DNA of 64,000 nt from Podarcis pityusensis (lineage: Eukaryota). Made by a program: the position numbers and the translations under genes. The stretch lies in NCBI GenBank assembly GCA_964106645.2, contig OZ067040.1; one strand, written 5' to 3'. The notes below the pieces were generated by a model that worked only from the letters and a program-made list of their open reading frames with translations, made no database searches and was not told the DNA's origin. Shown piece after piece: positions 37,556-57,215 of this stretch; the first letter of the stretch is position 1, and each line of letters begins with the position of its first letter.

Positions 37556-40081
37556 AGTTGCATCCAATGCTGTCCATGGACAAGCAGAATGGAGTTCAGC
37601 TCCTTCAACAAGACTTTCTCTGTTCCCCATTTCAGCCTCTCTGTATCCTCAAAACCTGCTCTGGTGGGTTGGAGGACACCCCCCCCCCTCCTTATATCAC
37701 AGATTTTGGAGACACACAGGGAACTGCAGGTTGGAGAAGTCCTGTTCTGTCAGCTTAAGTCCTTTTGCACAAGATTGGGTTGTGCAAAATCATAATGGGG
37801 GAAGGTGGGTGGGTTTGCCTTGGCTCACCTGGTATAGAAGCTCTGGCCCTCTCCATTCTACCCCATATACTGGGATGCTTTTTGTTGGTGACTAGTTTGT
37901 GTAAATGAATGGGAAGTTGGAATCGGGACCATTAGCTCCTTGTGGTGCAAAAGTGGCCAGGTTGAGCAAATGGCATTTAAATTCAGTATGGGTTATTTGA
38001 CAGAACTTTTACTTCTTCCCAAAGCCTTTGGTTTTTTTGGCCTCTGTTCACAGTTCTGTGTGTGGTAAAAGTTCATTTCCATTTCCTGATTTGGCCCTTC
38101 CAGTTTTGAAAGAGCTTGCAACTTTTTTTCTCTTGGAGGGTTGTGCTGTTCTATTTATAGAGCTTTGATACGTTGAATGCTTGTGCGTCAGCATAGTGTC
38201 CATTTCCTTTCTTAACGCATTCAGGAATGGTTATTTATGATTTTTTTAGATGTTGTTGTTCTTTTAGCTTTTTAAAATGCCTGTTTGAGGAGAGATTTAT
38301 CACATAGACAGACATCCTGACTTAACTGTGTGTGTGTATTTTTAACCAACGACTTGGCTCTATGAAGTCATTGCAGGAAAAGAATTTAGTAGGAAAATTG
38401 AACTTGCCGTAAAGTAACATCAAACAAAGTGATAGAAAGGTATGAGTTTTATAACTAAATGTGCATACTGAATAGTGTATGTAAATGCATTGTTCTAATG
38501 TTGGGACAGAAGTTACAGTAGCTGTCCCTTAGCCCTGATCAAGAATGGGCCCTGGGTTGATGCCCTCCTTCCATTAAAGTCTACTTCTGTGCTCCAGAAC
38601 ATCCCAGGTCAAATTAACCCCAAGTGATTCTGGTGCATGCACAGTGAACCCCATGATTAAGGGTGAGAGGAATTCATGTCTGAGAGGTTGAGGGCTATAT
38701 GAAAGGAGTGCATGAGGCTTATTCTCTCCTTGTAGGTAGTAGGAAATTCAGTATGGGGAAGGTCCCATCTCTGGGATTGGGTAGGCAGGACCTCTCCCCA
38801 AATCCATTCTTGGTCAGGGAAGGCTTTTACAAAGCTCACCCAAAGAGCTGAAGGTCATGTGAAGACACACTAATTAGGGTAACTGCATTCAAGTTGTTTC
38901 ATGTGCTGTGCAGTAGGGCCTTGACTTCCTCTTGCTGCAGTCTGAAGGAACCATGATGGTTAAATTCAACCCTTCAAGAGTCTCGAACCACCATAGACGT
39001 GGTAGCAGTGGACACTTTAAAATATTCAACATTGATCCTTGTCTTCTAATTTGGAAACAACAGAACTAAAAACAGTGTAAGCTTGCCAGGGAAGAGGATA
39101 AGATTTCTGGTTCAGGAGAGTTGTCTCTTGTTAAAATTGTAAAGAAGCAGAAGCCTTTTTTCTAGTTATTAGTACTGTATTTTTGTTGTTGTAAAAGGTA
39201 CTCGATATTTCAGTGGGTTGTGCAATGGGTTTAAATCATACTTTTAGTTATACTGCTATATGATTACATTTGGCCTTTGGCAAAACAATAAAGATTTGTG
39301 TTTGTCCCTAGCTAAATCTTCAGTCAGAGTAGCTTTAACCAAATAGTTTTGCTCAGAGCCTTTTAGGTTCTGTACAGCAGATGTGCTTATCCTGGGATTT
39401 ACTGCTGCTTGACATCCTTAAGTTAAACACCCTCCTGTGTACAAGAAAGAAGGGGAAAACTCTTTCTTGATAGGCTTCTGTTCTTCTGGTAGATAGTACA
39501 TTCTGACCACCCATCAGATGATGTGTTTTCGTGTTTGAGTATGGTTTGCATTGTTATTTGATTCTCTCACATGTGTAGTTTCCTACCTTGGAGCTTCCTT
39601 CACGATCTAGGGACACATTTCACCCCCCCAAGCAGTAGCAGCTAGCAGGGCAGCCCAGCCTGGTGGGTGCTATTCACCTAGCTTCCCAATGCTACACTCA
39701 CTGCTGACTACCGAAAGGGGGAGGGACAAGGCAGCAGGGAGCTTGGTGTGGTGTGGGCACAGTGGCAAAGCCGGTCCAATGCCCCCATCAAGCTCCTTAC
39801 TGTCTTGTCCCTCTCTCAGTAACCGGCAATGACATGCAGTGTTATTAGGCGAGATGTGCAACACGACCCTGCTTCCCCACTGGCTACTACTCCCTTCAGC
39901 AAAATACAGTTGGCTCCGCAGTCCCAGAAGCAAGATGTTGCTTTACCTAAGTACCTTTTCGCCTACAAAGAGAGCAGAAATCCATCTAGAATGAATGCCC
40001 TTTCCCCATTCCCTCAGCCATGATTAGGTGACATCTCTTACAACTGCATCAGACTCCAGGGTTTGAGGCTTCTGAAGTTAA

Positions 40082-40237
<156 letters not shown>

Positions 40238-40688
40238 TAAGAGGACTTTTCTGAAATACTGTGTTGTAATTTTGGTTCTCTTCTTCTGAGATGAGTTTTT
40301 AAATAACACTTTTATCCTATGGAAAGGGGGGGTGCATGTGTGTGTGCGTGCTTATGCCTATTCCCTCTTCCCCCTAAGCACATCCTGACTATTGTCCACT
40401 ACTTCCAGAATAGAAGTTAAGGGAGACTAAAAATCTCCCTTCCTCTAATAGAGCAGTCCCATCAGTGGAAATCTGTCCGTGGGAAACCTGAAGCCAACCC
40501 ATTTTTCTTTACAGATTTGCATTTAAGAAAAACCCAAATGCAAATTTCATGGGAAACAATTTCTTCCCAATTTAGTGTGAATCTTCAATTCCACATTCTG
40601 TGCTTTACATGCATACCTAAATAAATGAAGTTACAGCACATGACAGCTCTAATGTGTATGAAATTAAACACATATTTAATTTGAGGTA

Positions 40689-40886
40689 CAGTGGTATCTC
40701 AAGTTAAGAACTTAATTTGTTCTGGAAGCCCATTCTTAACCTGAGGTACCACTTTAGCTAATGGGGCCTCCCGAGGCCACCGTGCGATTTCTGTTCTCAT
40801 TCTGAAGCAAAGTTCTTAACCCGAGGTACTATTTCTGGGTTAGCAGAGTCTGTAACCTTAAGCGTATGTAACCTGAGGTACCACTG
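40689..40886. mobile_element. Tigger-like MITE (family of 4799); duplicated at 48257-48454
   Basis: TA-flanked CAGTGGTA...TACCACTG with shared interior. Confidence 0.85.
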
Positions 40887-41630
40887 TACAGGCAATTTTC
40901 CATTCACATGTGCTCTATTTGCATGTAACTATGTGCACATGGGGTGCCAGGAACCCAAAAGTGGATCCAGAAATGGGCATCACCCTGGAGAGTCCTCCTA
41001 GCTCATGGGGAGACTTTCCCCAGAGCCTCCCCACCTAACATCACATCAGCTGAGCAAACCCTGCAGCCCCCTAACTCAAGTGAGCCGGTCTGACTGCCTC
41101 AGCTGATGTGTGAGGAAGAAGCTTCCCTCCGCGTCAGCTGTGCAAACCCCGCTGCCCTCTCTGGCTTATGCCTGATCAACAGTGGGGCTTGCTGAGTGAC
41201 TCACTCCTCCAGGGTACTCCTGATATACACAGTTTTGGTTATACGCAGGGATGTCCGGACTGTAACCCCCACATAAATTGAGGGTTGTCTGCATTTAATG
41301 TGTAAAATACAAGTGCTATTCAGTTATGTCATACTAAGTAGTCAGATGCCTGTGTTGGCATCCATCTGTCTCAAGAGACAATGGAGTGCACCTCCAGGTG
41401 TGAAGTCAAACCACAGATGCCTGCATCTTTGCAAATTATTTCCATTTTACTCCAAACGATATTGAATTTATTTAATCTCAGATTGGTAACACTGTAGTAT
41501 ATTCCCTATTCAATCACACTTAAGGGTATTATACCTGTGTCAGTTGGAAAGCTTGAAATTTTATAGGGGTTGTGGCCTTTCCCTTTCCTGCCTGAATGGA
41601 ACTTTCCTAAATAAAATGTAAGAATGTTAG

Positions 41631-41831
<201 letters not shown>

Positions 41832-42708
41832 TAAGTAATCTTAAGTGTGTAAACTGCATCTTATTTAGATTTAGATCCCAGTTTTAAAAATCAGTGGGTG
41901 GGATCCAAAGGACTGTACAATGTTCTGTGCATATACCAGAGCTTTTCAACCTTCCCACCATTGTACTTTCAAAAAGCCACTTCTGATCCAGAGTTCCACA
42001 TGACTGTTCTTTATTTGAAATATATGCTTCAAAGTTTGTGTAATTTCCTAATGAACTGTGCTACATTTATTAATGTAGTTATAATATGCCTTATCTGAAA
42101 ATATTTCAGAAATGGCACTTCATCTACCTTGTGTTTCACTTGATAGTATTGTTGCTTATATATTTTCTTCATTACAGATCTTAATTCAGTGATACCATGC
42201 CTTTTCCAGAACATTATATCACCTAACTAATATTGTCTCATATTCTGTATTGTTTATTCACCATTTTAATTCCACTAGATGATGCACAAGCCATTACAAT
42301 CTAGAGGGAGATAGAATTCATCCTTGAGAGACATACTTTTTAACATTTTTAAGTGCATAGTAAATGTTAATTGGTAGCAGAACTTGAGGATGACCATAGA
42401 CATAAACTGCGAATCAGCTTGACCTTTTGCTCTGGCTAGGTTTCCTACCACTGCACACATTCACTTATTACCCAGCTACCAGAGCTTGGACTGGAGATTG
42501 GGGGAACTCAGTGTTCTAGTCCTCCTTTTCGAGGCCCAGCAAGTCAGACAAGAGTTTTGGCATGGATCCTGACAGCTGTATGGCACTTCTTCAGGGAGTC
42601 AGGACAGTATATATGCTGTAAAATGAAACCAGCCCTACAGCTCTAGTAGACTTTGTCAAAAATAAATCATATAAACATTGTCCTCAAATATTGTATAATC
42701 TCTGTTAA

Positions 42709-42825
<117 letters not shown>

Positions 42826-43899
42826 TGATTTGATTATTGCAAAGATCTAGCATGATCTGCTTCTTTTTCTTTTGTACCTGCTTTATTAAAGTGTGATGTT
42901 TCAGTTTGCCAGTTGGGCTTTACAAGGCAAAGGTCACTAATGAGATACACAGATGGGCACCCTGAGCCAGGAGATCCAAGAGTCATTCAGGCTGAGCATG
43001 TGCCAGCAAGACTGATCTCAAAGTCACACTGATTTTAGGACAAAAAATAATAATTTTCCTCCAGTTTTTGTTCATGACTATGGTAGCAACTGGAAGGAAG
43101 ATTTCCAGGTGCAGAAAAGGGTAGGATGGTTGTCTGGGCTATTCTGGACAGTTAGATGCTTGGCTGTAGGTGGGTGTCTTTTGGTATTGGTTGGAAGTTA
43201 ACAGCTCAGGGATCTCTCTAAGCTACTGACAAATACTGTTGTAATTGAAATAGGATATGAAGGATATTTGGCTTTAGAAATTCCAAAAGTTTCCAGGCCA
43301 CTGTTTTCTGATGTTTACTAAGAATCTCCTTTCTTGTAACTGTGAGCCGTTAGTTTGTGTCCTACCCTCCAGAGCAGGAGAAAACACGCTTGCTCCATCT
43401 TCCTTCTAACCGCCCTTCAGATATTTGAAGATAGCTATCTTGTCTTCTTTCAGTCTCTTCTGGTTAGAGCCAAGGTGATAGTGTGTGGTTGGGTGTGGGG
43501 ATTGGGGACAAGCTGGTACTCTCTGGTAGCGACATAGAACACTTAGGAAATACATTACCACAAGACATGATGATCGCTAGTTTAGCTAGGTTTAAGCAAA
43601 AGGATTGGGCATTTTAAAATGTAGGTCTGTGTCTGGGGCCTCATGTTCAGAAACAGTATATTATAGGCCTTATCACTAAATGCTGGGAACAAAGGGGATG
43701 ACTGTCTCCAACGTGCCTTATTTGTGAGTTTCCTGGTTGCATCTGGCTGTTGGTGCTAGACCAGATGGCTCTGGCTTCGTTTTCTGAATTTCTCACATTG
43801 TCTTCCACTGTTCTCCCATTTTCATTATTGGAACGTTTCTAGCTACTAGGTAACTGTTATTATTCAAATCCTAGAATGTATTTTTCTTTTACTTCTCAG

Positions 43900-44122
43900 G
43901 TAAAGCTATGAAGAAATGGGTTGAGTCAATTACAAAGATAATCCATAGGAAAAAGCAAGCACAAGCAATTGGGCCAAGTCACAATATTACTTTTGAAAGC
44001 TCACCACCTCCAATTGAGTGGCATATTAGCAAGCCAGGACACATTGAAACATTTGACCTGCTTACGTTGCATCCAATAGAAATTGCTCGACAGCTCACAT
44101 TACTTGAATCTGAACTTTACAG
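43900..44122 (+). CDS. SOS1: SOS1 exon 14 (copy 1)
   Basis: 223 nt, AG/GT; [15 protein letters not shown]...[10 protein letters not shown]. Confidence 0.93.
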
Positions 44123-44432
44123 GTAGCTCTGAAAACAATATTATTCTCTTCTACATCATAATATGCGAGCAATGTAGTGTTCGGTCCTGGTCATTTCTGC
44201 ATTCAGTTCTTACTAGCAAAGCTATTCATATTGCATTTAGGGAACAATGTTCCAAATTGTGACTCTAGTATATATTAATGTGAATTTGATATAGCTAGTA
44301 AAGTGATAATTTATTTTCATATGTTGGCATTTTGGAGCTCACTGTTAAAGAACGTATTATGAAAGCAAGATTTGTAAGCTGTAAGCTATAAGCTTCCAGA
44401 ACCTCATCCACAGATATAGCATTTAACTAGAG

Positions 44433-44558
44433 ATTTTTTTTGTTTGCTTTGTAGAATGCCATTGTTCTACCATCTACTTTTAACAACCAATTCTCTCCAA
44501 TTGGTTGTTAACAGTAGATGGTAGAACAATGGCATTCTACAAAGCAAACAAAAAAAAT
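44433..44558. repeat. 60-bp-arm inverted repeat (also at 52001-52126)
   Basis: arms 44433-44492 and 44499-44558, one mismatch, 6-nt loop. Confidence 0.92.
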
Positions 44559-44648
44559 GCAGTCAATGTTTTTTTCTGATTTGAGAATTATTGGTTATTT
44601 GTAATAATCTAGATGGAAGTAGTAGCTCAATTGACCATAAAATGATAG

Positions 44649-44807
<159 letters not shown>

Positions 44808-45098
44808 TAAGTTGCTTGAGTGCTTTGACTAAGATCTTCTAAATATTGATATTAACATCCAGGTCCATACAGAGCTAGTCTGAGACCCGAGATAGGATTC
44901 TTGTTAGAATGAAAAAAAAAAAAAAAAACCCAGCCAAAGGCATTAGGCCTTTGTTTGGACTGAGGGGTGGTTGTAGCCTCCGCCTGCCCCTCCTTATTAA
45001 GGGTATCTTGTTAAAGGGAACTGGGGGTGTGGATTCTGTCCGATGCCCAGATGTGGGCATGGACCATGCCACAACCCCAACGGGGATCCCTCAGGGTG

Positions 45099-45298
45099 NN
45101 NNNNNNNNNNNNNNNNNNNNNNNNNNNNNNNNNNNNNNNNNNNNNNNNNNNNNNNNNNNNNNNNNNNNNNNNNNNNNNNNNNNNNNNNNNNNNNNNNNNN
45201 NNNNNNNNNNNNNNNNNNNNNNNNNNNNNNNNNNNNNNNNNNNNNNNNNNNNNNNNNNNNNNNNNNNNNNNNNNNNNNNNNNNNNNNNNNNNNNNNNN
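45099..45298. other. assembly gap (200 N)
   Basis: run of exactly 200 n. Confidence 0.99.
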
Positions 45299-47649
45299 TT
45301 GGAGAAGTCCTGTTCTGTCAGCTTAAGTCCTTTTGCACAAGATTGGGTTGTGCAAAATCATAATGGGGGAAGGTGGGTGGGTTTGCCTTGGCTCACCTGG
45401 TATAGAAGCTCTGGCCCTCTCCATTCTACCCCATATACTGGGATGCTTTTTGTTGGTGACTAGTTTGTGTAAATGAATGGGAAGTTGGAATCGGGACCAT
45501 TAGCTCCTTGTGGTGCAAAAGTGGCCAGGTTGAGCAAATGGCATTTAAATTCAGTATGGGTTATTTGACAGAACTTTTACTTCTTCCCAAAGCCTTTGGT
45601 TTTTTTGGCCTCTGTTCACAGTTCTGTGTGTGGTAAAAGTTCATTTCCATTTCCTGATTTGGCCCTTCCAGTTTTGAAAGAGCTTGCAACTTTTTTTCTC
45701 TTGGAGGGTTGTGCTGTTCTATTTATAGAGCTTTGATACGTTGAATGCTTGTGCGTCAGCATAGTGTCCATTTCCTTTCTTAACGCATTCAGGAATGGTT
45801 ATTTATGATTTTTTTAGATGTTGTTGTTCTTTTAGCTTTTTAAAATGCCTGTTTGAGGAGAGATTTATCACATAGACAGACATCCTGACTTAACTGTGTG
45901 TGTGTATTTTTAACCAACGACTTGGCTCTATGAAGTCATTGCAGGAAAAGAATTTAGTAGGAAAATTGAACTTGCCGTAAAGTAACATCAAACAAAGTGA
46001 TAGAAAGGTATGAGTTTTATAACTAAATGTGCATACTGAATAGTGTATGTAAATGCATTGTTCTAATGTTGGGACAGAAGTTACAGTAGCTGTCCCTTAG
46101 CCCTGATCAAGAATGGGCCCTGGGTTGATGCCCTCCTTCCATTAAAGTCTACTTCTGTGCTCCAGAACATCCCAGGTCAAATTAACCCCAAGTGATTCTG
46201 GTGCATGCACAGTGAACCCCATGATTAAGGGTGAGAGGAATTCATGTCTGAGAGGTTGAGGGCTATATGAAAGGAGTGCATGAGGCTTATTCTCTCCTTG
46301 TAGGTAGTAGGAAATTCAGTATGGGGAAGGTCCCATCTCTGGGATTGGGTAGGCAGGACCTCTCCCCAAATCCATTCTTGGTCAGGGAAGGCTTTTACAA
46401 AGCTCACCCAAAGAGCTGAAGGTCATGTGAAGACACACTAATTAGGGTAACTGCATTCAAGTTGTTTCATGTGCTGTGCAGTAGGGCCTTGACTTCCTCT
46501 TGCTGCAGTCTGAAGGAACCATGATGGTTAAATTCAACCCTTCAAGAGTCTCGAACCACCATAGACGTGGTAGCAGTGGACACTTTAAAATATTCAACAT
46601 TGATCCTTGTCTTCTAATTTGGAAACAACAGAACTAAAAACAGTGTAAGCTTGCCAGGGAAGAGGATAAGATTTCTGGTTCAGGAGAGTTGTCTCTTGTT
46701 AAAATTGTAAAGAAGCAGAAGCCTTTTTTCTAGTTATTAGTACTGTATTTTTGTTGTTGTAAAAGGTACTCGATATTTCAGTGGGTTGTGCAATGGGTTT
46801 AAATCATACTTTTAGTTATACTGCTATATGATTACATTTGGCCTTTGGCAAAACAATAAAGATTTGTGTTTGTCCCTAGCTAAATCTTCAGTCAGAGTAG
46901 CTTTAACCAAATAGTTTTGCTCAGAGCCTTTTAGGTTCTGTACAGCAGATGTGCTTATCCTGGGATTTACTGCTGCTTGACATCCTTAAGTTAAACACCC
47001 TCCTGTGTACAAGAAAGAAGGGGAAAACTCTTTCTTGATAGGCTTCTGTTCTTCTGGTAGATAGTACATTCTGACCACCCATCAGATGATGTGTTTTCGT
47101 GTTTGAGTATGGTTTGCATTGTTATTTGATTCTCTCACATGTGTAGTTTCCTACCTTGGAGCTTCCTTCACGATCTAGGGACACATTTCACCCCCCCAAG
47201 CAGTAGCAGCTAGCAGGGCAGCCCAGCCTGGTGGGTGCTATTCACCTAGCTTCCCAATGCTACACTCACTGCTGACTACCGAAAGGGGGAGGGACAAGGC
47301 AGCAGGGAGCTTGGTGTGGTGTGGGCACAGTGGCAAAGCCGGTCCAATGCCCCCATCAAGCTCCTTACTGTCTTGTCCCTCTCTCAGTAACCGGCAATGA
47401 CATGCAGTGTTATTAGGCGAGATGTGCAACACGACCCTGCTTCCCCACTGGCTACTACTCCCTTCAGCAAAATACAGTTGGCTCCGCAGTCCCAGAAGCA
47501 AGATGTTGCTTTACCTAAGTACCTTTTCGCCTACAAAGAGAGCAGAAATCCATCTAGAATGAATGCCCTTTCCCCATTCCCTCAGCCATGATTAGGTGAC
47601 ATCTCTTACAACTGCATCAGACTCCAGGGTTTGAGGCTTCTGAAGTTAA

Positions 47650-47805
<156 letters not shown>

Positions 47806-49198
47806 TAAGAGGACTTTTCTGAAATACTGTGTTGTAATTTTGGTTCTCTTCTTCTGAGATGAGTTTTTAAATAACACTTTTATCCTATGGAAAGGGGGGG
47901 TGCATGTGTGTGTGCGTGCTTATGCCTATTCCCTCTTCCCCCTAAGCACATCCTGACTATTGTCCACTACTTCCAGAATAGAAGTTAAGGGAGACTAAAA
48001 ATCTCCCTTCCTCTAATAGAGCAGTCCCATCAGTGGAAATCTGTCCGTGGGAAACCTGAAGCCAACCCATTTTTCTTTACAGATTTGCATTTAAGAAAAA
48101 CCCAAATGCAAATTTCATGGGAAACAATTTCTTCCCAATTTAGTGTGAATCTTCAATTCCACATTCTGTGCTTTACATGCATACCTAAATAAATGAAGTT
48201 ACAGCACATGACAGCTCTAATGTGTATGAAATTAAACACATATTTAATTTGAGGTACAGTGGTATCTCAAGTTAAGAACTTAATTTGTTCTGGAAGCCCA
48301 TTCTTAACCTGAGGTACCACTTTAGCTAATGGGGCCTCCCGAGGCCACCGTGCGATTTCTGTTCTCATTCTGAAGCAAAGTTCTTAACCCGAGGTACTAT
48401 TTCTGGGTTAGCAGAGTCTGTAACCTTAAGCGTATGTAACCTGAGGTACCACTGTACAGGCAATTTTCCATTCACATGTGCTCTATTTGCATGTAACTAT
48501 GTGCACATGGGGTGCCAGGAACCCAAAAGTGGATCCAGAAATGGGCATCACCCTGGAGAGTCCTCCTAGCTCATGGGGAGACTTTCCCCAGAGCCTCCCC
48601 ACCTAACATCACATCAGCTGAGCAAACCCTGCAGCCCCCTAACTCAAGTGAGCCGGTCTGACTGCCTCAGCTGATGTGTGAGGAAGAAGCTTCCCTCCGC
48701 GTCAGCTGTGCAAACCCCGCTGCCCTCTCTGGCTTATGCCTGATCAACAGTGGGGCTTGCTGAGTGACTCACTCCTCCAGGGTACTCCTGATATACACAG
48801 TTTTGGTTATACGCAGGGATGTCCGGACTGTAACCCCCACATAAATTGAGGGTTGTCTGCATTTAATGTGTAAAATACAAGTGCTATTCAGTTATGTCAT
48901 ACTAAGTAGTCAGATGCCTGTGTTGGCATCCATCTGTCTCAAGAGACAATGGAGTGCACCTCCAGGTGTGAAGTCAAACCACAGATGCCTGCATCTTTGC
49001 AAATTATTTCCATTTTACTCCAAACGATATTGAATTTATTTAATCTCAGATTGGTAACACTGTAGTATATTCCCTATTCAATCACACTTAAGGGTATTAT
49101 ACCTGTGTCAGTTGGAAAGCTTGAAATTTTAAAGGGGTTGTGGCCTTTCCCTTTCCTGCCTGAATGGAACTTTCCTAAATAAAATGTAAGAATGTTAG

Positions 49199-49399
<201 letters not shown>

Positions 49400-50276
49400 T
49401 AAGTAATCTTAAGTGTGTAAACTGCATCTTATTTAGATTTAGATCCCAGTTTTTAAAATCAGTGGGTGGGATCCAAAGGACTGTACAATGTTCTGTGCAT
49501 ATACCAGAGCTTTTCAACCTTCCCACCATTGTACTTTCAAAAAGCCACTTCTGATCCAGAGTTCCACATGACTGTTCTTTATTTGAAATATATGCTTCAA
49601 AGTTTGTGTAATTTCCTAATGAACTGTGCTACATTTATTAATGTAGTTATAATATGCCTTATCTGAAAATATTTCAGAAATGGCACTTCATCTACCTTGT
49701 GTTTCACTTGATAGTATTGTTGCTTATATATTTTCTTCATTACAGATCTTAATTCAGTGATACCATGCCTTTTCCAGAACATTATATCACCTAACTAATA
49801 TTGTCTCATATTCTGTATTGTTTATTCACCATTTTAATTCCACTAGATGATGCACAAGCCATTACAATCTAGAGGGAGATAGAATTCATCCTTGAGAGAC
49901 ATACTTTTTAACATTTTTAAGTGCACAGTAAATGTTAATTGGTAGCAGAACTTGAGGATGACCATAGACATAAACTGCGAATCAGCTTGACCTTTTGCTC
50001 TGGCTAGGTTTCCTACCACTGCACACATTCACTTATTACCCAGCTACCAGAGCTTGGACTGGAGATTGGGGGAACTCAGTGTTCTAGTCCTCCTTTTCGA
50101 GGCCCAGCAAGTCAGACAAGAGTTTTGGCATGGATCCTGACAGCTGTATGGCACTTCTTCAGGGAGTCAGGACAGTATATATGCTGTAAAATGAAACCAG
50201 CCCTACAGCTCTAGTAGACTTTGTCAAAAATAAATCATATAAACATTGTCCTCAAATATTGTATAATCTCTGTTAA

Positions 50277-50393
<117 letters not shown>

Positions 50394-51467
50394 TGATTTG
50401 ATTATTGCAAAGATCTAGCATGATCTGCTTCTTTTTCTTTTGTACCTGCTTTATTAAAGTGTGATGTTTCAGTTTGCCAGTTGGGCTTTACAAGGCAAAG
50501 GTCACTAATGAGATACACAGATGGGCACCCTGAGCCAGGAGATCCAAGAGTCATTCAGGCTGAGCATGTGCCAGCAAGACTGATCTCAAAGTCACACTGA
50601 TTTTAGGACAAAAAATAATAATTTTCCTCCAGTTTTTGTTCATGACTATGGTAGCAACTGGAAGGAAGATTTCCAGGTGCAGAAAAGGGTAGGATGGTTG
50701 TCTGGGCTATTCTGGACAGTTAGATGCTTGGCTGTAGGTGGGTGTCTTTTGGTATTGGTTGGAAGTTAACAGCTCAGGGATCTCTCTAAGCTACTGACAA
50801 ATACTGTTGTAATTGAAATAGGATATGAAGGATATTTGGCTTTAGAAATTCCAAAAGTTTCCAGGCCACTGTTTTCTGATGTTTACTAAGAATCTCCTTT
50901 CTTGTAACTGTGAGCCGTTAGTTTGTGTCCTACCCTCCAGAGCAGGAGAAAACACGCTTGCTCCATCTTCCTTCTAACCGCCCTTCAGATATTTGAAGAT
51001 AGCTATCTTGTCTTCTCTCAGTCTCTTCTGGTTAGAGCCAAGGTGATAGTGTGTGGTTGGGTGTGGGGATTGGGGACAAGCTGGTACTCTCTGGTAGCGA
51101 CATAGAACACTTAGGAAATACATTACCACAAGACATGATGATCGCTAGTTTAGCTAGGTTTAAGCAAAAGGATTGGGCATTTTAAAATGTAGGTCTGTGT
51201 CTGGGGCCTCATGTTCAGAAACAGTATATTATAGGCCTTATCACTAAATGCTGGGAACAAAGGGGATGACTGTCTCCAACGTGCCTTATTTGTGAGTTTC
51301 CTGGTTGCATCTGGCTGTTGGTGCTAGACCAGATGGCTCTGGCTTCGTTTTCTGAATTTCTCACATTGTCTTCCACTGTTCTCCCATTTTCATTATTGGA
51401 ACGTTTCTAGCTACTAGGTAACTGTTATTATTCAAATCCTAGAATGTATTTTTCTTTTACTTCTCAG

Positions 51468-51690
51468 GTAAAGCTATGAAGAAATGGGTTGAGTCAATTA
51501 CAAAGATAATCCATAGGAAAAAGCAAGCACAAGCAATTGGGCCAAGTCACAATATTACTTTTGAAAGCTCACCACCTCCAATTGAGTGGCATATTAGCAA
51601 GCCAGGACACATTGAAACATTTGACCTGCTTACGTTGCATCCAATAGAAATTGCTCGACAGCTCACATTACTTGAATCTGAACTTTACAG
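51468..51690 (+). CDS. SOS1: SOS1 exon 14 (copy 2)
   Basis: same sequence as 43900-44122. Confidence 0.85.
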
Positions 51691-52216
51691 GTAGCTCTGA
51701 AAACAATATTATTCTCTTCTACTTCATAATATGCAAGCAATGTAGTGTTCGGTCCTGGTCATTTCTGCATTCAGTTCTTACTAGCAAAGCTATTCATATT
51801 GCATTTAGGGAACAATGTTCCAAATTGTGACTCTAGTATATATTAATGTGAATTTGATATAGCTAGTAAAGTGATAATTTATTTTCATATGTTGGCATTT
51901 TGGAGCTCACTGTTAAAGAACGTATTATGAAAGCAAGATTTGTAAGCTGTAAGCTATAAGCTTCCAGAACCTCATCCACAGATATAGCATTTAACTAGAG
52001 ATTTTTTTTGTTTGCTTTGTAGAATGCCATTGTTCTACCATCTACTTTTAACAACCAATTCTCTCCAATTGGTTGTTAACAGTAGATGGTAGAACAATGG
52101 CATTCTACAAAGCAAACAAAAAAAATGCAGTCAATGTTTTTTTCTGATTTGAGAATTATTGGTTATTTGTAATAATCTAGATGGAAGTAGTAGCTCAATT
52201 GACCATAAAATGATAG

Positions 52217-52375
<159 letters not shown>

Positions 52376-52448
52376 TAAGTTGCTTGAGTGCTTTGACTAA
52401 GATCTTCTAAATATTGATATTAACATCCAGGTCCATACAGAGCTAGTC

Positions 52449-52889
52449 TGAGACCCGAGATAGGATTCTTGTTAGAATGAAAAAAAAAAAAAAACCCAGC
52501 CAAAGGCATTAGGCCTTTGTTTGGACTGAGGGGTGGTTGTAGCCTCCGCCTGCCCCTCCTTATTAAGGGTATCTTGTTAAAGGGAACTGGGGGTGTGGAT
52601 TCTGTCCGATGCCCAGATGTGGGCATGGACCATGCCACAACCCCAACGGGGATCCCTCAGGGTGACCCTATTTGATATAAGTCATTGGGCTCATCATATT
52701 GGTGGTTTACCCTTAGTTTGGCTGTCTGCAGATGGGCGGGAGTCGAGATACACCCAGTGCCTAAGCCAAACTGTGCACATTTGTAAACAATAAAGTTGTG
52801 GCCTATTTGAACCCATAAACCAAATCCACTTGTCCATGTGTTTATTGTCCACTAGGGAACTGTGGATCATGGGGCCTTGGCATGCAACA
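52449..52889 (+). mobile_element. possible solo LTR
   Basis: TG...AACA ends, TATA-like TATAAG (~52676) and AATAAA (~52789) in LTR order; no clean TSD found. Confidence 0.35.
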
Positions 52890-54277: not shown

Positions 54278-54466
<189 letters not shown>

Positions 54467-56170
54467 TAAGATTTATTCTTGAAGAATATAAAATCACAAA
54501 TGTTGATAAGCCACAGAACTATTAAGAAACCATTTCTTAAATATATTAGTGGAGCTTGCTATATTGTTAGGAATAGCCAGGCATTTCAAAGAATCAGTAT
54601 TTCAACTTCAAAAGCTTTCCCCCCTGTTCAATATCAAATCCACAATTTCACTACATTTTAGTTGGAACCCTTGACCTGATTTTTCAGCTATCTTCATGTG
54701 TTAGGTACTAATACAAATTAGTATTTAACTCATTTAGAAACACTAAGCATTTGTGAAGTGTACTTTGTGGTTCTAGCTTAACCAGGGGAATATCAAGGGA
54801 TGGAGATCAGATAAAGTGCTCCAATTTATTCTGTGCTTTTTTTTTTAGCGCTGTTATACTCTACGTGATAAAGATACTTTCTGACTGTGCTTTGACAGTA
54901 GACTGATTCAGATGCAATGATCTCTGTCTAATAAACCATGGTGTTTTAAACAGAACAAACATTGTGCCTGTGTGCCTCCTCCTTTCCTTTCCCCTTCTCC
55001 ATTAGTGGTGAGGAATGCTAAATATAGAACACCTGAATATAGAATACTAGATCTGCTATATAAATAAGCCAGGGAGGCTCGCCTGATGCATTTGTTACAT
55101 ATTTTTAGGTGCCAGACAAGCCTTATTCCAAGTCTTTGGCTAATTAAACAATCCATGGCCTTTTAAATGGGCAGGGGGTATAATTGTTTTGGTCTGTTAT
55201 TATGGTATGTGTTTTTTGTTTTGTAAACTACCCCTATGATCTTTGGGTGAAGGTCAGTATAGACATTTTAATATTAATAATAATTATAAAGTTTCTCACT
55301 CACATTTTTTTACCAACCTATCTTGTGAGCATTCCTATTTATAAGATTAAAAGGATCAGGTTTTAGAAAATAGCTGCCTAGTTGCATGGAGGTAATTTAT
55401 ATGCTCTGCAGGCAGCCAGGAAAGTGGTTGTTTACAAACCTGTATTGTATTATTTATTTACATAATGACATTAGTACACATTATGCTTTGTATTGCAAGA
55501 ACACATAGCCCTGCCCCAAGGAGCTTATAATCTGAAATTTGACACACCAAAGGGGTGCTATGGAAGGTAGTAAAAAGGAATGTATTACTGTTTCAGTTGC
55601 ATACATGTAGCCTTGGTGATAGGGCATGGGGATTATGGGGTGGTACTAAAGGCTTCATGGAAACTGTGGGTTTTGAAGAAGAAGGAAAATAGGTAACATC
55701 ACAGATGGTCTAGAAGTCAGTGAAGGGTGATGGAGCTGGAGGAATGAAAGTCATGGATAGATACAAAAAAAGATATAAGAATGGCGAGAGAAGGAACTTG
55801 GAGGCCTTTGAAGGTAAGGGGAAAGAAGGGAAGTAGGGTCACTCCATTGGCTCTACTGTGAGACCTCCAGTCTTTCAGCCTTTCTCTCCTTCAGCACTTA
55901 TTAGCAACAGCCATTTTATCGGGCTGCAGAGCAGAGAGAGAGAAGGAAAGCAGGGCCATTTCATCCTCCTTTCCCTGAACAGTTGAAACCCCAGCTGGTT
56001 GTTATAAGAACACTGTAACCTGTCCTGGTACCTGCTTCACCCGCTCCATCCCCTCCTCCTTTTTCATTCTGTGTTAGGTCGGTTGCATTGTAAGCCTTGG
56101 TGTGTGTGGATAGACTAAGTAAAAAAATTCCTTCCTGTAGCACCTTAAAGACCAACTAAGTTAGTTCTTG

Positions 56171-56208
56171 GTATAAGCTTTCGTGTGCATGCACACTTCT
56201 TCAGATAC
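56171..56208 (-). ncRNA. minimal type I hammerhead ribozyme motif (antisense copy)
   Basis: exact reverse complement of 56277-56314. Confidence 0.7.
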
Positions 56209-56276
56209 ACAACCTTCAGATGTATTCTTTATTTATTCTTTATGTATTTATGTATTCTTCAGATACATAACCCTGT

Positions 56277-56314
56277 GTATCTGAAGAAGTGTGCATGCAC
56301 ACGAAAGCTTATAC
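56277..56314 (+). ncRNA. minimal type I hammerhead ribozyme motif (sense to SOS1)
   Basis: GUAU-CUGAAGA-A-GUGUG(CAUG)CACAC-GAA-AGCU-U-AUAC. Confidence 0.72.
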
Positions 56315-56927
56315 CAAGAACTAACTTAGTTGGTCTTTAAGGTGCTACAGGAAGGAATTTTTTTACTTCGACTATGGCAGACCAACACGGCTACCCATCT
56401 GTATGTGGATAGACTGTCTTTTAAAAATTATTATTGAGTGAGAGCCTTTCAGATGAAGAGCTGGTAGAATGGCAGGCAAAAAAAAAAAAAATGAGGATGA
56501 AATTCAAAGAGGGTGGTTGAGTGCATGCCATGAGTCTGGAAGCTAGTAACAAAAAGCTGAGGAAAGGGTTAGGAGGCACTGTGGAGTTTTGAAGGAGGGT
56601 GTAGAGGTGGGTAGAGAGGCAGGTGACAAAAGGTGTAGCTTGCCATTAGAATGGCTTGGTCACAAACGGGCATTAAGTGGGCAGTGCCCTTTGGCCACCA
56701 TCCTAGGTTAGTTAACCATGTGTTGAGATGAAGCCCAAACTTTGTTTCACCCCATGTAAGTAGCAGCAGCAAGGCCAGCTGGCACATCTGCTTGGAGGAG
56801 AGGAGATCAGGAATCCCTTTGTTGGATCTTCAGAAAAAAATTAAGTGCATAATTCAACCTTCCCAAAGCCTTTGTAGCTCTAACCTTAATTCTAGTTTTC
56901 CATTGAAAGACCATAACCATTTTATAG

Positions 56928-57215
<288 letters not shown>

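What the first reader, a model, noticed from the sequence alone, without database searches (positions are those of the whole stretch)
56105..56415. Paired, oppositely oriented hammerhead ribozymes in a Penelope-like insertion in SOS1 intron 17
Seen: a 12-bp TSD (TGTGGATAGACT) and perfect 95-bp inverted arms (56117-56211 and 56274-56368) around a 62-bp spacer that contains re-copied CTTCAGATAC-type pieces. Each arm carries a hammerhead core: stem I GUAU/AUAC, CUGAAGA, stem II GUGUG/CACAC, GAA, palindromic AGCU as stem III, and a predicted cut after CUU. Known: Penelope-like pseudo-LTRs carry minimal type I hammerheads that cleave as dimers, and these elements often leave inverted ends. Inference: SOS1 pre-mRNA contains a self-cleaving motif together with its own perfect antisense strand, which is transcribed first and should lock it into a 95-bp duplex. 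That architecture could let such insertions be tolerated in either orientation, while creating an ADAR/Dicer substrate. Zero divergence between the arms suggests a very recent insertion.
Basis: partly seen in the sequence, partly recalled or inferred. Interest (0 to 1): 0.8.

Follow-up and report, generated by a model that had tools for sequence, protein, structure and literature searches.

The report
Head-to-head Penelope retroelement insertion, SOS1 intron
This is a small, young, dead-on-arrival insertion of a Penelope-like retrotransposon in a lizard SOS1 intron; its palindromic shape and two hammerhead motifs are the normal footprint of that transposon class, so the finding is real but ordinary.

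Summary
There is a 12/12 target-site duplication, two 95-nt arms that are 95/95 complementary, and a 62-bp filler holding re-copied pieces. A complete minimal hammerhead motif lies on the + strand of the right arm and the - strand of the left arm.

These features match the published hallmarks of endonuclease-containing Penelope-like elements (PLEs):
- a minimal hammerhead with an extra base after A9, a G10.1-C11.1 pair and a palindromic 15.2/16.2;
- a head-to-head inverted 5'-truncated copy;
- a 30-40 bp 'tail' at one end only;
- a short TSD.

SOS1 is on the + strand, and the insertion lies in intron 54462-56955.

Folding predicts a -180 kcal/mol hairpin. Freeing the single sense hammerhead costs about 63 kcal/mol, it has no dimer partner in cis, and such motifs barely cleave without PLE protein. 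Self-cleavage of SOS1 pre-mRNA is therefore not expected.

The inverted shape is best explained by the PLE integration mechanism, not by selection for tolerance. 'Very recent' is only bounded at roughly under 6-18 Myr. Rfam gives no hammerhead hit.

The scan has noted similar palindromic PLE insertions elsewhere in this genome (s1-711312, s1-725628, s1-717138). No other family copies, reads or orthologous sites could be retrieved.

The parts
56105..56116 (.). Left copy of the 12-bp target-site duplication TGTGGATAGACT
   Evidence: 12/12 identical to 56404-56415 and directly abutting the element ends
56117..56211 (-). Left arm: the 95-nt terminal segment of the element, sense on the - strand, with its 3' end facing the left TSD and no tail
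   Evidence: 95/95 complementary to 56274-56368
56171..56208 (-). Minimal hammerhead motif of the left arm
   Evidence: descriptor hit; the isolated 47-mer has a hammerhead-shaped minimum-energy fold
56212..56273 (.). 62-bp AT-rich filler at the head-to-head junction. It includes an 18-nt re-copy (56255-56272) of the inner end of the left arm. That re-copy forms a 13-bp mini-palindrome with the start of the right arm (56255-56267 / 56276-56288).
56274..56368 (+). Right arm: the same 95-nt terminal segment, sense on the + strand (the SOS1 transcript strand)
56277..56314 (+). Minimal hammerhead motif of the right arm; predicted scissile bond between 56310 and 56311
56369..56403 (+). 35-bp 'tail' extension present only on the right copy. 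It is AC-rich in its core (AGACCAACAC) and predicted to form a small stem-loop.
   Evidence: It matches the 30-40 bp optional one-sided tail of PLEs (PMC8557442, PMC3846280) and the interval between the two RT start sites (PMC11167929).
56404..56415 (.). Right copy of the 12-bp target-site duplication
54462..56955 (+). Host intron of SOS1 (donor GT 54462-63, acceptor AG 56954-55). The insertion lies 1,655 nt from the donor and about 550 nt from the acceptor.
   Evidence: The flanking exons match human SOS1, and the downstream exon aligns to residues 930-988 of PDB 3ksy.

Best explanation
The feature is a 287-bp, non-coding, dead-on-arrival insertion made by the integration machinery of a Penelope-like retroelement (PLE) in an intron of lizard SOS1.

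Structure (shown). Two copies of the same terminal segment of the element lie head to head. Each copy is the element's own minimal hammerhead plus 58 nt downstream of its cut site. Their 3' ends face the two target ends. One copy carries the optional 35-nt tail. A 62-bp templated filler joins the copies, and a 12-bp target-site duplication flanks the whole.

Origin (inferred). The GIY-YIG endonuclease cut both strands 12 bp apart. Reverse transcription then started from the two alternative internal start sites, tail-less on the left and tailed on the right, either on both cleaved strands or on one strand followed by self-priming at the junction. The cDNAs ended just 5' of the hammerhead and were joined with microhomology-templated filler.

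Consequence (inferred). The hammerheads are passengers of the element and not a device of SOS1. In SOS1 pre-mRNA the insert should fold into a perfect 95-bp hairpin that sequesters the single sense hammerhead. That hammerhead also lacks a dimer partner and the PLE protein, so it does not cleave. The insertion is removed with the intron and is effectively neutral, and the hairpin may attract dsRNA-binding enzymes.
For: Anatomy is confirmed.

The hammerhead motif is more than chance. Only the two arm sites match the descriptor in the window, and none match in 300 random 64-kb sequences.

The motif shows the three single-sequence features of the four that Cervera & de la Pena 2014 (PMC4209133) found in PLE min-HHRs although these were not in their search descriptor (the fourth, covariation, needs other copies):
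- a G10.1-C11.1 pair (G56289-C56302);
- a palindromic 15.2/16.2 (GC) with no loop 3.
It also has a short helix I (4 bp). The same paper reports pairs of min-HHRs 100-700 bp apart on opposite strands.

Published PLE structure matches:
- Craig et al. 2021 (PMC8557442): PLE insertions are 5'-truncated, often have an inverted 5'-truncated copy forming inverted repeats, and carry a 30-40 bp tail, often at one end only.
- Arkhipova et al. 2013 (PMC3846280): a 31-bp tail on one of the inverted pLTRs, 8-10 bp TSDs, palindromes at the inverted junction, and head-to-head as the commonest arrangement.
- Frangieh et al. 2024 (PMC11167929): the Anolis PLE protein cleaves and extends both DNA strands, starts reverse transcription at two internal sites whose interval is the tail, and starts in an AC-rich stem-loop. 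Its hammerhead cleaves only with the protein, and no RNA-seq ends were seen at the cut site.
- The Poseidon_Ac consensus has the same hammerhead architecture, read by eye: an extra U after A9 and the palindrome ACGU.

Folding: hairpin -180.4 kcal/mol, against -117.1 kcal/mol with the hammerhead stems enforced.

Host gene and strand.
Against: - No Rfam hammerhead model matches, even at E<=10 on a 78-nt stretch.
- No second copy of the family could be obtained: none in the window and none in the metagenome or viral collections. Covariation, family ends and a link to an RT/GIY-YIG ORF are therefore untested.
- The one lizard PLE consensus I could read (Poseidon_Ac) shares the architecture but shows no evident sequence identity outside the catalytic core.
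- All three sense frames between the hammerhead and the tail are closed, as read. The arm therefore does not carry an ORF start in stem II as PAc does. The source may be a non-autonomous relative.
- The 12-bp TSD is a little longer than the 8-10 bp in the cited rotifer examples.
- The TSD itself is not AT-rich; only the downstream flank is.
Confidence: 0.85

Rival explanations
1. The source RNA was a short non-autonomous, PLE-mobilised element (a retrozyme-like or SINE-like unit of about 95-130 nt that begins at the hammerhead), not a randomly 5'-truncated autonomous PLE. This changes the source only. The integration mechanism and the fate of the insertion stay as in the best explanation.
For: - Both arms stop at the same base, 3 nt 5' of stem I.
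- No open frame runs from the hammerhead to the tail (read).
- Scan notes, untested, list stand-alone inserts of 99 and 133 bp in this genome. These are close to 95 nt without the tail and 130 nt with it.
- A 2026 preprint argues that animal retrozymes derive from PLE pLTRs.
Against: - No tandem direct repeats are present, and these define retrozymes.
- The identical inner ends could equally come from self-priming, with the second arm copied from the first.
- No other family copies were available to test whether the 5' end recurs.
Confidence: 0.3
2. The inverted pair is a selected arrangement: a 'safety catch' that lets hammerhead-bearing insertions persist in introns in either orientation, or a regulatory hairpin of SOS1.
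For: The hairpin does sequester the ribozyme in silico. At least two such palindromes are noted in introns of this genome (this one and s1-725628).
Against: - The arrangement is the default by-product of PLE integration (PMC8557442, PMC3846280, PMC11167929).
- It also occurs upstream of a promoter, outside any intron (s1-711312).
- Minimal hammerheads are nearly inactive as monomers anyway (PMC4209133), so no safety catch is needed.
- The insertion appears too young to have been shaped by selection, though zero arm and TSD divergence bounds its age only at about 6-18 Myr.
Confidence: 0.04
3. It is a hairpin small-RNA gene: a microRNA or endo-siRNA precursor born from the palindrome.
For: Rfam miRNA-precursor models align to it, for example MIR8007 at 92.7 bits and MIR1222 at 60.7 bits.
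Against: - All these matches are far below the family gathering scores (195, 100, 90 and so on).
- They fall on plant families and on both strands, which is the generic response to any long perfect hairpin.
- A whole-window search at gathering thresholds gives nothing.
- No expression data could be obtained.
Confidence: 0.05
4. It is a miniature inverted-repeat DNA transposon (MITE) with 95-bp terminal inverted repeats.
For: Long inverted arms flanked by a direct duplication.
Against: - The right end carries 35 unpaired bases, so the inverted repeats are not terminal on both sides.
- From general knowledge of the superfamilies, a 12-bp TSD falls outside the fixed 2-11 bp TSDs of DNA transposon superfamilies.
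- The arms carry a complete PLE-type hammerhead, and the filler has retroelement-style junction stutter.
Confidence: 0.03

Closest known systems
Head-to-head (inverted pLTR) insertions of endonuclease-containing Penelope-like elements (Evgen'ev & Arkhipova 2005; Arkhipova et al. 2013, PMC3846280; Craig et al. 2021, PMC8557442)
   Same: - an inverted 5'-truncated copy joined head to head
- a 30-40 bp tail on one end only (35 bp here)
- a short TSD
- a small palindrome and filler at the inverted junction
- a hammerhead in the repeated part
   Different: There is no ORF and no direct pLTR between the arms. This is the minimal case, with two terminal fragments only. The 12-bp TSD compares with 8-10 bp in the cited rotifer copies.
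Minimal hammerhead (min-HHR) of metazoan PLEs (Cervera & de la Pena 2014, PMC4209133; Lunse et al. 2017, cited through PMC6765202)
   Same: - a full catalytic core
- an extra nucleotide between A9 and G10.1
- a G10.1-C11.1 pair
- a palindromic 15.2/16.2 without loop 3, so helix III can form only in a dimer
- a short open helix I
   Different: Helix II is 5 bp with a CAUG loop and forms a perfect 14-nt palindrome. The cleavage triplet is CUU. Activity and covariation were not tested here.
Poseidon_Ac (PAc) of Anolis carolinensis (Frangieh et al. 2024, PMC11167929)
   Same: It is a lizard PLE with the same hammerhead architecture. Two internal RT start sites define a tail, both target strands are cleaved and extended, and RT initiates in an AC-rich stem-loop.
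   Different: - It is a different sequence family, with no evident identity outside the core by eye.
- The PAc ORF starts in stem II, whereas all frames here close before the tail.
- The distances from the cut site to the ends are 58 and 93 nt here. The proximal PAc start site lies about 85-92 nt from the cut site.
Animal non-LTR retrozymes (Cervera & de la Pena 2020, PMC7229834; Li et al. 2026 preprint)
   Same: They are short non-coding hammerhead-bearing units related to PLE pLTRs, and monomer 'offspring' are scattered in genomes, including introns.
   Different: Retrozymes are tandem direct repeats with canonical type-I hammerheads that have interacting loops. This insert is an inverted pair with a loop-less minimal motif.

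Membership tests
Penelope-like element insertion (EN+ PLE footprint) | Hammerhead motif in the repeated terminal (pLTR-ORF junction) region | tested here: met
Penelope-like element insertion (EN+ PLE footprint) | Inverted 5'-truncated copy adjacent, head to head | tested here: met
   95/95 complementary arms with their 3' ends facing outward
Penelope-like element insertion (EN+ PLE footprint) | Optional 30-40 bp tail, often at one end only | tested here: met
   35 bp at 56369-56403, at the right end only; criterion from PMC8557442
Penelope-like element insertion (EN+ PLE footprint) | Short target-site duplication | tested here: met
   12/12 identical
Penelope-like element insertion (EN+ PLE footprint) | Sequence homology to an element encoding a PLE reverse transcriptase and GIY-YIG endonuclease | tested here: inconclusive
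   Only the Poseidon_Ac consensus could be read. The architecture is shared but no sequence identity is evident by eye. No TE library or eukaryotic genome search is available, and searches gave nothing.
Penelope-like element insertion (EN+ PLE footprint) | AT-rich target with cleavage at ATT (shown for PAc) | tested here: inconclusive
   the downstream flank is AT-rich with ATT motifs, but the 12-bp TSD itself is 42% G+C
PLE minimal hammerhead (min-HHR) | Conserved core C3 U4 G5 A6 N7 G8 A9, G12 A13 A14, A15.1-U16.1, H17 not G | tested here: met
   positions 56281-56310
PLE minimal hammerhead (min-HHR) | Extra nucleotide between 9 and 10.1; G10.1-C11.1 pair; palindromic 15.2/16.2 with no loop 3 | tested here: met
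   A56288; G56289-C56302; G56307 and C56308; criteria from PMC4209133
PLE minimal hammerhead (min-HHR) | Covariation in helices I and II among family copies | not testable with these tools
   The two arms are identical and no other copy was retrievable.
PLE minimal hammerhead (min-HHR) | Self-cleavage as a dimer or with PLE protein | not testable with these tools
   This needs a bench assay.
Rfam hammerhead families (Hammerhead_1, _3, HH9, HH10, II) | Score at or near the family gathering threshold | tested here: not met
   no hammerhead match even at E<=10
Non-LTR retrozyme | Tandem direct repeats of a hammerhead-bearing unit | tested here: not met
   the two copies are inverted, not direct
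MITE / TIR DNA transposon | Inverted repeats terminal at both ends, with a fixed short TSD | tested here: not met
   a 35-bp unpaired right end and a 12-bp TSD
microRNA precursor families hit by Rfam | Score at or above the gathering threshold | tested here: not met
   best hit 92.7 bits against a threshold of 195; none at gathering

The most novel reading that the evidence does not exclude
Host-gene transcription through such minimal head-to-head PLE insertions yields perfect dsRNA of about 95 bp. This dsRNA covers exactly the hammerhead-to-RT-start region that the PLE protein needs. Intronic palindromes like this one could then act as accidental triggers of ADAR editing or small-RNA silencing against active copies of the same PLE family. 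They would be a self-generated brake on the element, not a device of SOS1.
Probability: 0.1. Interest if true: 0.5.

Novelty: already known. Interest (0 to 1): 0.15.

Why it matters
It matters little beyond annotation. The locus is a clean, minimal textbook example of PLE integration. It shows two outward-facing 3' ends, one with the tail and one without, and a stuttered junction. This fits the recent in vitro finding that a lizard PLE protein cleaves and extends both DNA strands from two internal start sites.

It also shows that Rfam hammerhead models miss PLE minimal hammerheads, so genome scans will keep flagging them by eye.

For SOS1, the practical conclusion is that the intron carries a long perfect hairpin but no credible self-cleaving activity.

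Tried and rejected
- **Rfam search, whole region and a 78-nt cut-out at E<=10 and whole window at gathering thresholds.** No hammerhead family matched. Only generic sub-threshold miRNA-hairpin matches appeared, and I rejected these as hairpin artefacts.
- **Other copies in the window.** None were found.
- **Exact and degenerate hammerhead patterns in metagenome and viral contig collections.** No matches were found. These collections are not expected to hold lizard DNA, so this says little.
- **The look-up of sequencing runs.** Expression, editing, cleavage ends and polymorphism remain untested.
- **Exact look-ups of three ORFs beside the insertion, to fetch orthologous or allelic contigs.** Nothing was on record, so no empty site could be examined.
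- **The search of earlier findings by sequence.** Blank.
- **Lunse et al. 2017 (PMC5785218).** The paper is not held, so I cite it only through a review.
- **Formal alignment with the Poseidon_Ac consensus.** I left this out because it would have required typing a long sequence. I compared the roughly 40-nt hammerheads by eye only.
- **MITE and assembly-artefact readings.** I rejected both because of the TSD, the one-sided tail and the complete ribozyme motif.
- **Other limits.** No contig taken for human was met, and the N run 45099-45298 was left as it is.
Full report
**Observation.**
- TGTGGATAGACT occurs at 56105-56116 and again at 56404-56415, 12/12 identical.
- Between these copies lie 287 bp. 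The stretches 56117-56211 and 56274-56368 are perfect reverse complements, 95/95.
- The repeat finder stretches the arms to 102 nt at 98%, but the extra 7 positions are 5/7 chance matches between the TSD and the next segment.
- The arms are separated by a 62-bp spacer that is 74% A+T. It contains an 18-nt, 94% re-copy (56255-56272) of the inner end of the left arm (56197-56214) and short direct repeats of ATGTATTCTT.
- The re-copied piece forms a 13-bp mini-palindrome with the first bases of the right arm (56255-56267 / 56276-56288).

**The hammerhead.** On the + strand of the right arm the motif reads as follows:
- helix I GUAU (56277-80) pairs with AUAC (56311-14);
- the core is C3-A9 = CUGAAGA (56281-87);
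- an extra A lies at 56288;
- helix II is GUGUG-CAUG-CACAC (56289-56302);
- G12 A13 A14 lie at 56303-05, followed by A15.1 G C U16.1 (56306-09) and H17 = U (56310);
- the predicted scissile bond is 56310/56311.

The same 38 nt lie on the - strand at 56171-56208. I wrote a descriptor after the published minimal-hammerhead description. It finds exactly these two sites in the 64-kb window and none in 300 random 64-kb sequences of the same first-order composition. A looser descriptor also finds only these two. The isolated 47-mer has a hammerhead-shaped minimum-energy fold, but a weak one (-9 kcal/mol, z = -1).

Rfam gives no hammerhead match at E<=10, either in 2.5 kb or in a 78-nt cut-out. Its only matches are sub-threshold alignments of long-hairpin miRNA models, on both strands and mostly to plant families. 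That is what any perfect palindrome produces. Nothing in the window reaches a gathering score.

**What the motif is.** Cervera & de la Pena 2014 (PMC4209133) defined 'min-HHRs' in the pseudo-LTRs of Penelope-like elements (PLEs). They listed four features that emerged without being in their search descriptor:
- covariation within families;
- a G10.1-C11.1 pair;
- a palindromic 15.2/16.2 with no loop 3.

They also described a short helix I of 4-5 bp. The present motif has all the features that can be read from one sequence. They further reported pairs of min-HHRs 100-700 bp apart on opposite strands, and min-HHR families in reptiles (turtle and snakes). These motifs escaped earlier searches because helix III can form only in a dimer, which also explains the silence of Rfam. 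Single motifs did not cleave in vitro, and dimers cleaved weakly (review PMC6765202).

**What the insertion is.** The published hallmarks of endonuclease-containing PLE insertions are:
- strong 5' truncation;
- an inverted 5'-truncated copy adjacent to the 5' end, forming inverted repeats;
- a 30-40 bp 'tail' often present at only one end;
- short TSDs;
- palindromes at the inverted junction, with head-to-head as the commonest arrangement (PMC8557442; PMC3846280; PMC8969392).

Here both copies have their 3' ends facing the target ends. Only the right copy has the tail, which is 35 bp. The junction carries a mini-palindrome and templated filler, and the TSD is 12 bp.

Frangieh et al. 2024 (PMC11167929) give the mechanism for a lizard PLE, Poseidon of Anolis carolinensis.
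- Reverse transcription starts at two internal sites in an AC-rich stem-loop downstream of the hammerhead, and the interval between the sites is the tail.
- The hammerhead cleaves only in the presence of the protein.
- Public RNA-seq shows no ends at the cut site.

In the present element the two outer ends lie 58 nt (no tail) and 93 nt (tail) downstream of the cut site. The tail has an AC-rich core (AGACCAACAC) in a predicted small stem-loop.

The Poseidon_Ac consensus printed in that paper has the same hammerhead architecture: CUGAGGA, an extra U, a G...C helix II, GAA, palindromic ACGU, then C and the cut. I saw no sequence identity outside the core, so the present element belongs to another family. 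All three sense frames between the hammerhead and the tail are closed. The source may therefore be a non-autonomous relative. I could not decide this point.

**How it probably arose (inference).** The element's endonuclease made staggered cuts 12 bp apart. cDNA synthesis began at the tail-less start site at the left nick and at the tailed start site at the right nick. Alternatively, the second arm was copied from the first by self-priming, as Arkhipova et al. proposed for junction palindromes. Both arms end at the same base, 3 nt 5' of helix I. This fits either a shared RNA 5' end or a snap-back copy. The junction was then sealed with AT-rich filler templated from the nearby CTTCAGATAC sequence. 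Scan notes of 99-bp and 133-bp stand-alone inserts in the same genome would fit a recurrent 5' end, but I could not check them.

**Host context.** Stop-free + strand segments match SOS1 along the window.
- Pfam finds RasGEF in two of them.
- The exon just downstream of the insertion aligns to residues 930-988 of human SOS1 in PDB 3ksy, at E = 2e-30.
- The upstream exon ends ...INPPCVPFF.
- The intron runs from donor GT 54462-63 to acceptor AG 56954-55.
- 'Intron 17' is consistent with human numbering as I recall it, with E846 in exon 16. I did not test this numbering with a tool.

**What it does in RNA (inference from computation).**
- The 287-nt insert folds into an uninterrupted 95-bp hairpin at -180.4 kcal/mol, z = -25.
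- Forcing helices I and II of the right-arm hammerhead raises the energy to -117.1 kcal/mol. The equilibrium probabilities of its helix I and helix II pairs are about 1e-44 and 3e-19.
- Each transcript holds one hammerhead and its complement, not two ribozymes, so the dimer needed for helix III has no partner in cis.
- Two free copies would pair through the 14-nt palindromic helix II (-28 kcal/mol) in preference to the AGCU helix III (-6.3 kcal/mol).

Given the published weak, protein-dependent activity as well, self-cleavage of SOS1 pre-mRNA is not expected. The long perfect duplex is a plausible substrate for dsRNA-binding enzymes, but I have no data on this.

**Age.** There are no differences in the 95 arm positions or the 12 TSD positions. 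This gives a 95% upper bound of about 6, 9 or 18 Myr for assumed rates of 2.4, 1.5 or 0.8 x 10^-9 per site per year. Arm-to-arm conversion could also erase differences. 'Young' is fair; 'very recent' is not shown.

**What could not be done.**
- Pattern scans of the metagenome and viral collections and exact look-ups of three neighbouring ORFs returned nothing. I have no second copy of the family, no orthologous empty site and no expression data.
- A formal alignment with the Poseidon_Ac consensus was left out because it would have meant typing a long sequence.

**Verdict.** Identification as a Penelope-type insertion with minimal hammerheads is well supported by structure, though not by homology to an RT-bearing copy. 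The hairpin lock is supported in silico. The adaptive 'tolerance' reading is unsupported and unnecessary.

The scan has already met the same kind of palindrome at other loci of this genome (s1-711312, followed up with the same conclusion; s1-725628; s1-717138). The kind is already known, and interest is low.

Noticed in passing
window 39001-45098 and 46569-52664 (N run 45099-45298 between them): These two 6.1-kb blocks are 99.85% identical and lie on either side of an assembly gap. They repeat SOS1 REM/RasGEF exons, for example 43875-44123 and 44649-44807. The most likely cause is a false duplication at the gap, not a real tandem duplication inside the gene.
   Followed up: partly
window 56289-56302 and 56183-56196: Helix II of this hammerhead is a perfect 14-nt palindrome (GTGTGCATGCACAC) that contains an ATG. 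Two RNA copies are predicted to pair through it (-28 kcal/mol) much more strongly than through the AGCU helix III (-6.3 kcal/mol) needed for the active dimer.
   Followed up: partly
window 56369-56403: The tail contains an ATG (56375) that opens a frame (MADQHGYPSV...) running to the end of the element. It may be the start of the family's ORF or a chance ATG. It is too short to search.
   Followed up: no
other pieces of the same genome (scan notes s1-717193, s1-711326): These notes report stand-alone Penelope-type inserts of 99 and 133 bp. The sizes are close to this element's arm without the tail (95) and with it (130). That hints at a recurrent 5' end just upstream of the hammerhead and at very short full-length cDNAs from internal RT initiation. 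No sequences were available to check.
   Followed up: no
window 56416-56495: An AT-rich stretch immediately right of the insertion is followed by an A14 run (about 56479-56492). It may be the tail of an older retroelement into or beside which the PLE inserted.
   Followed up: no
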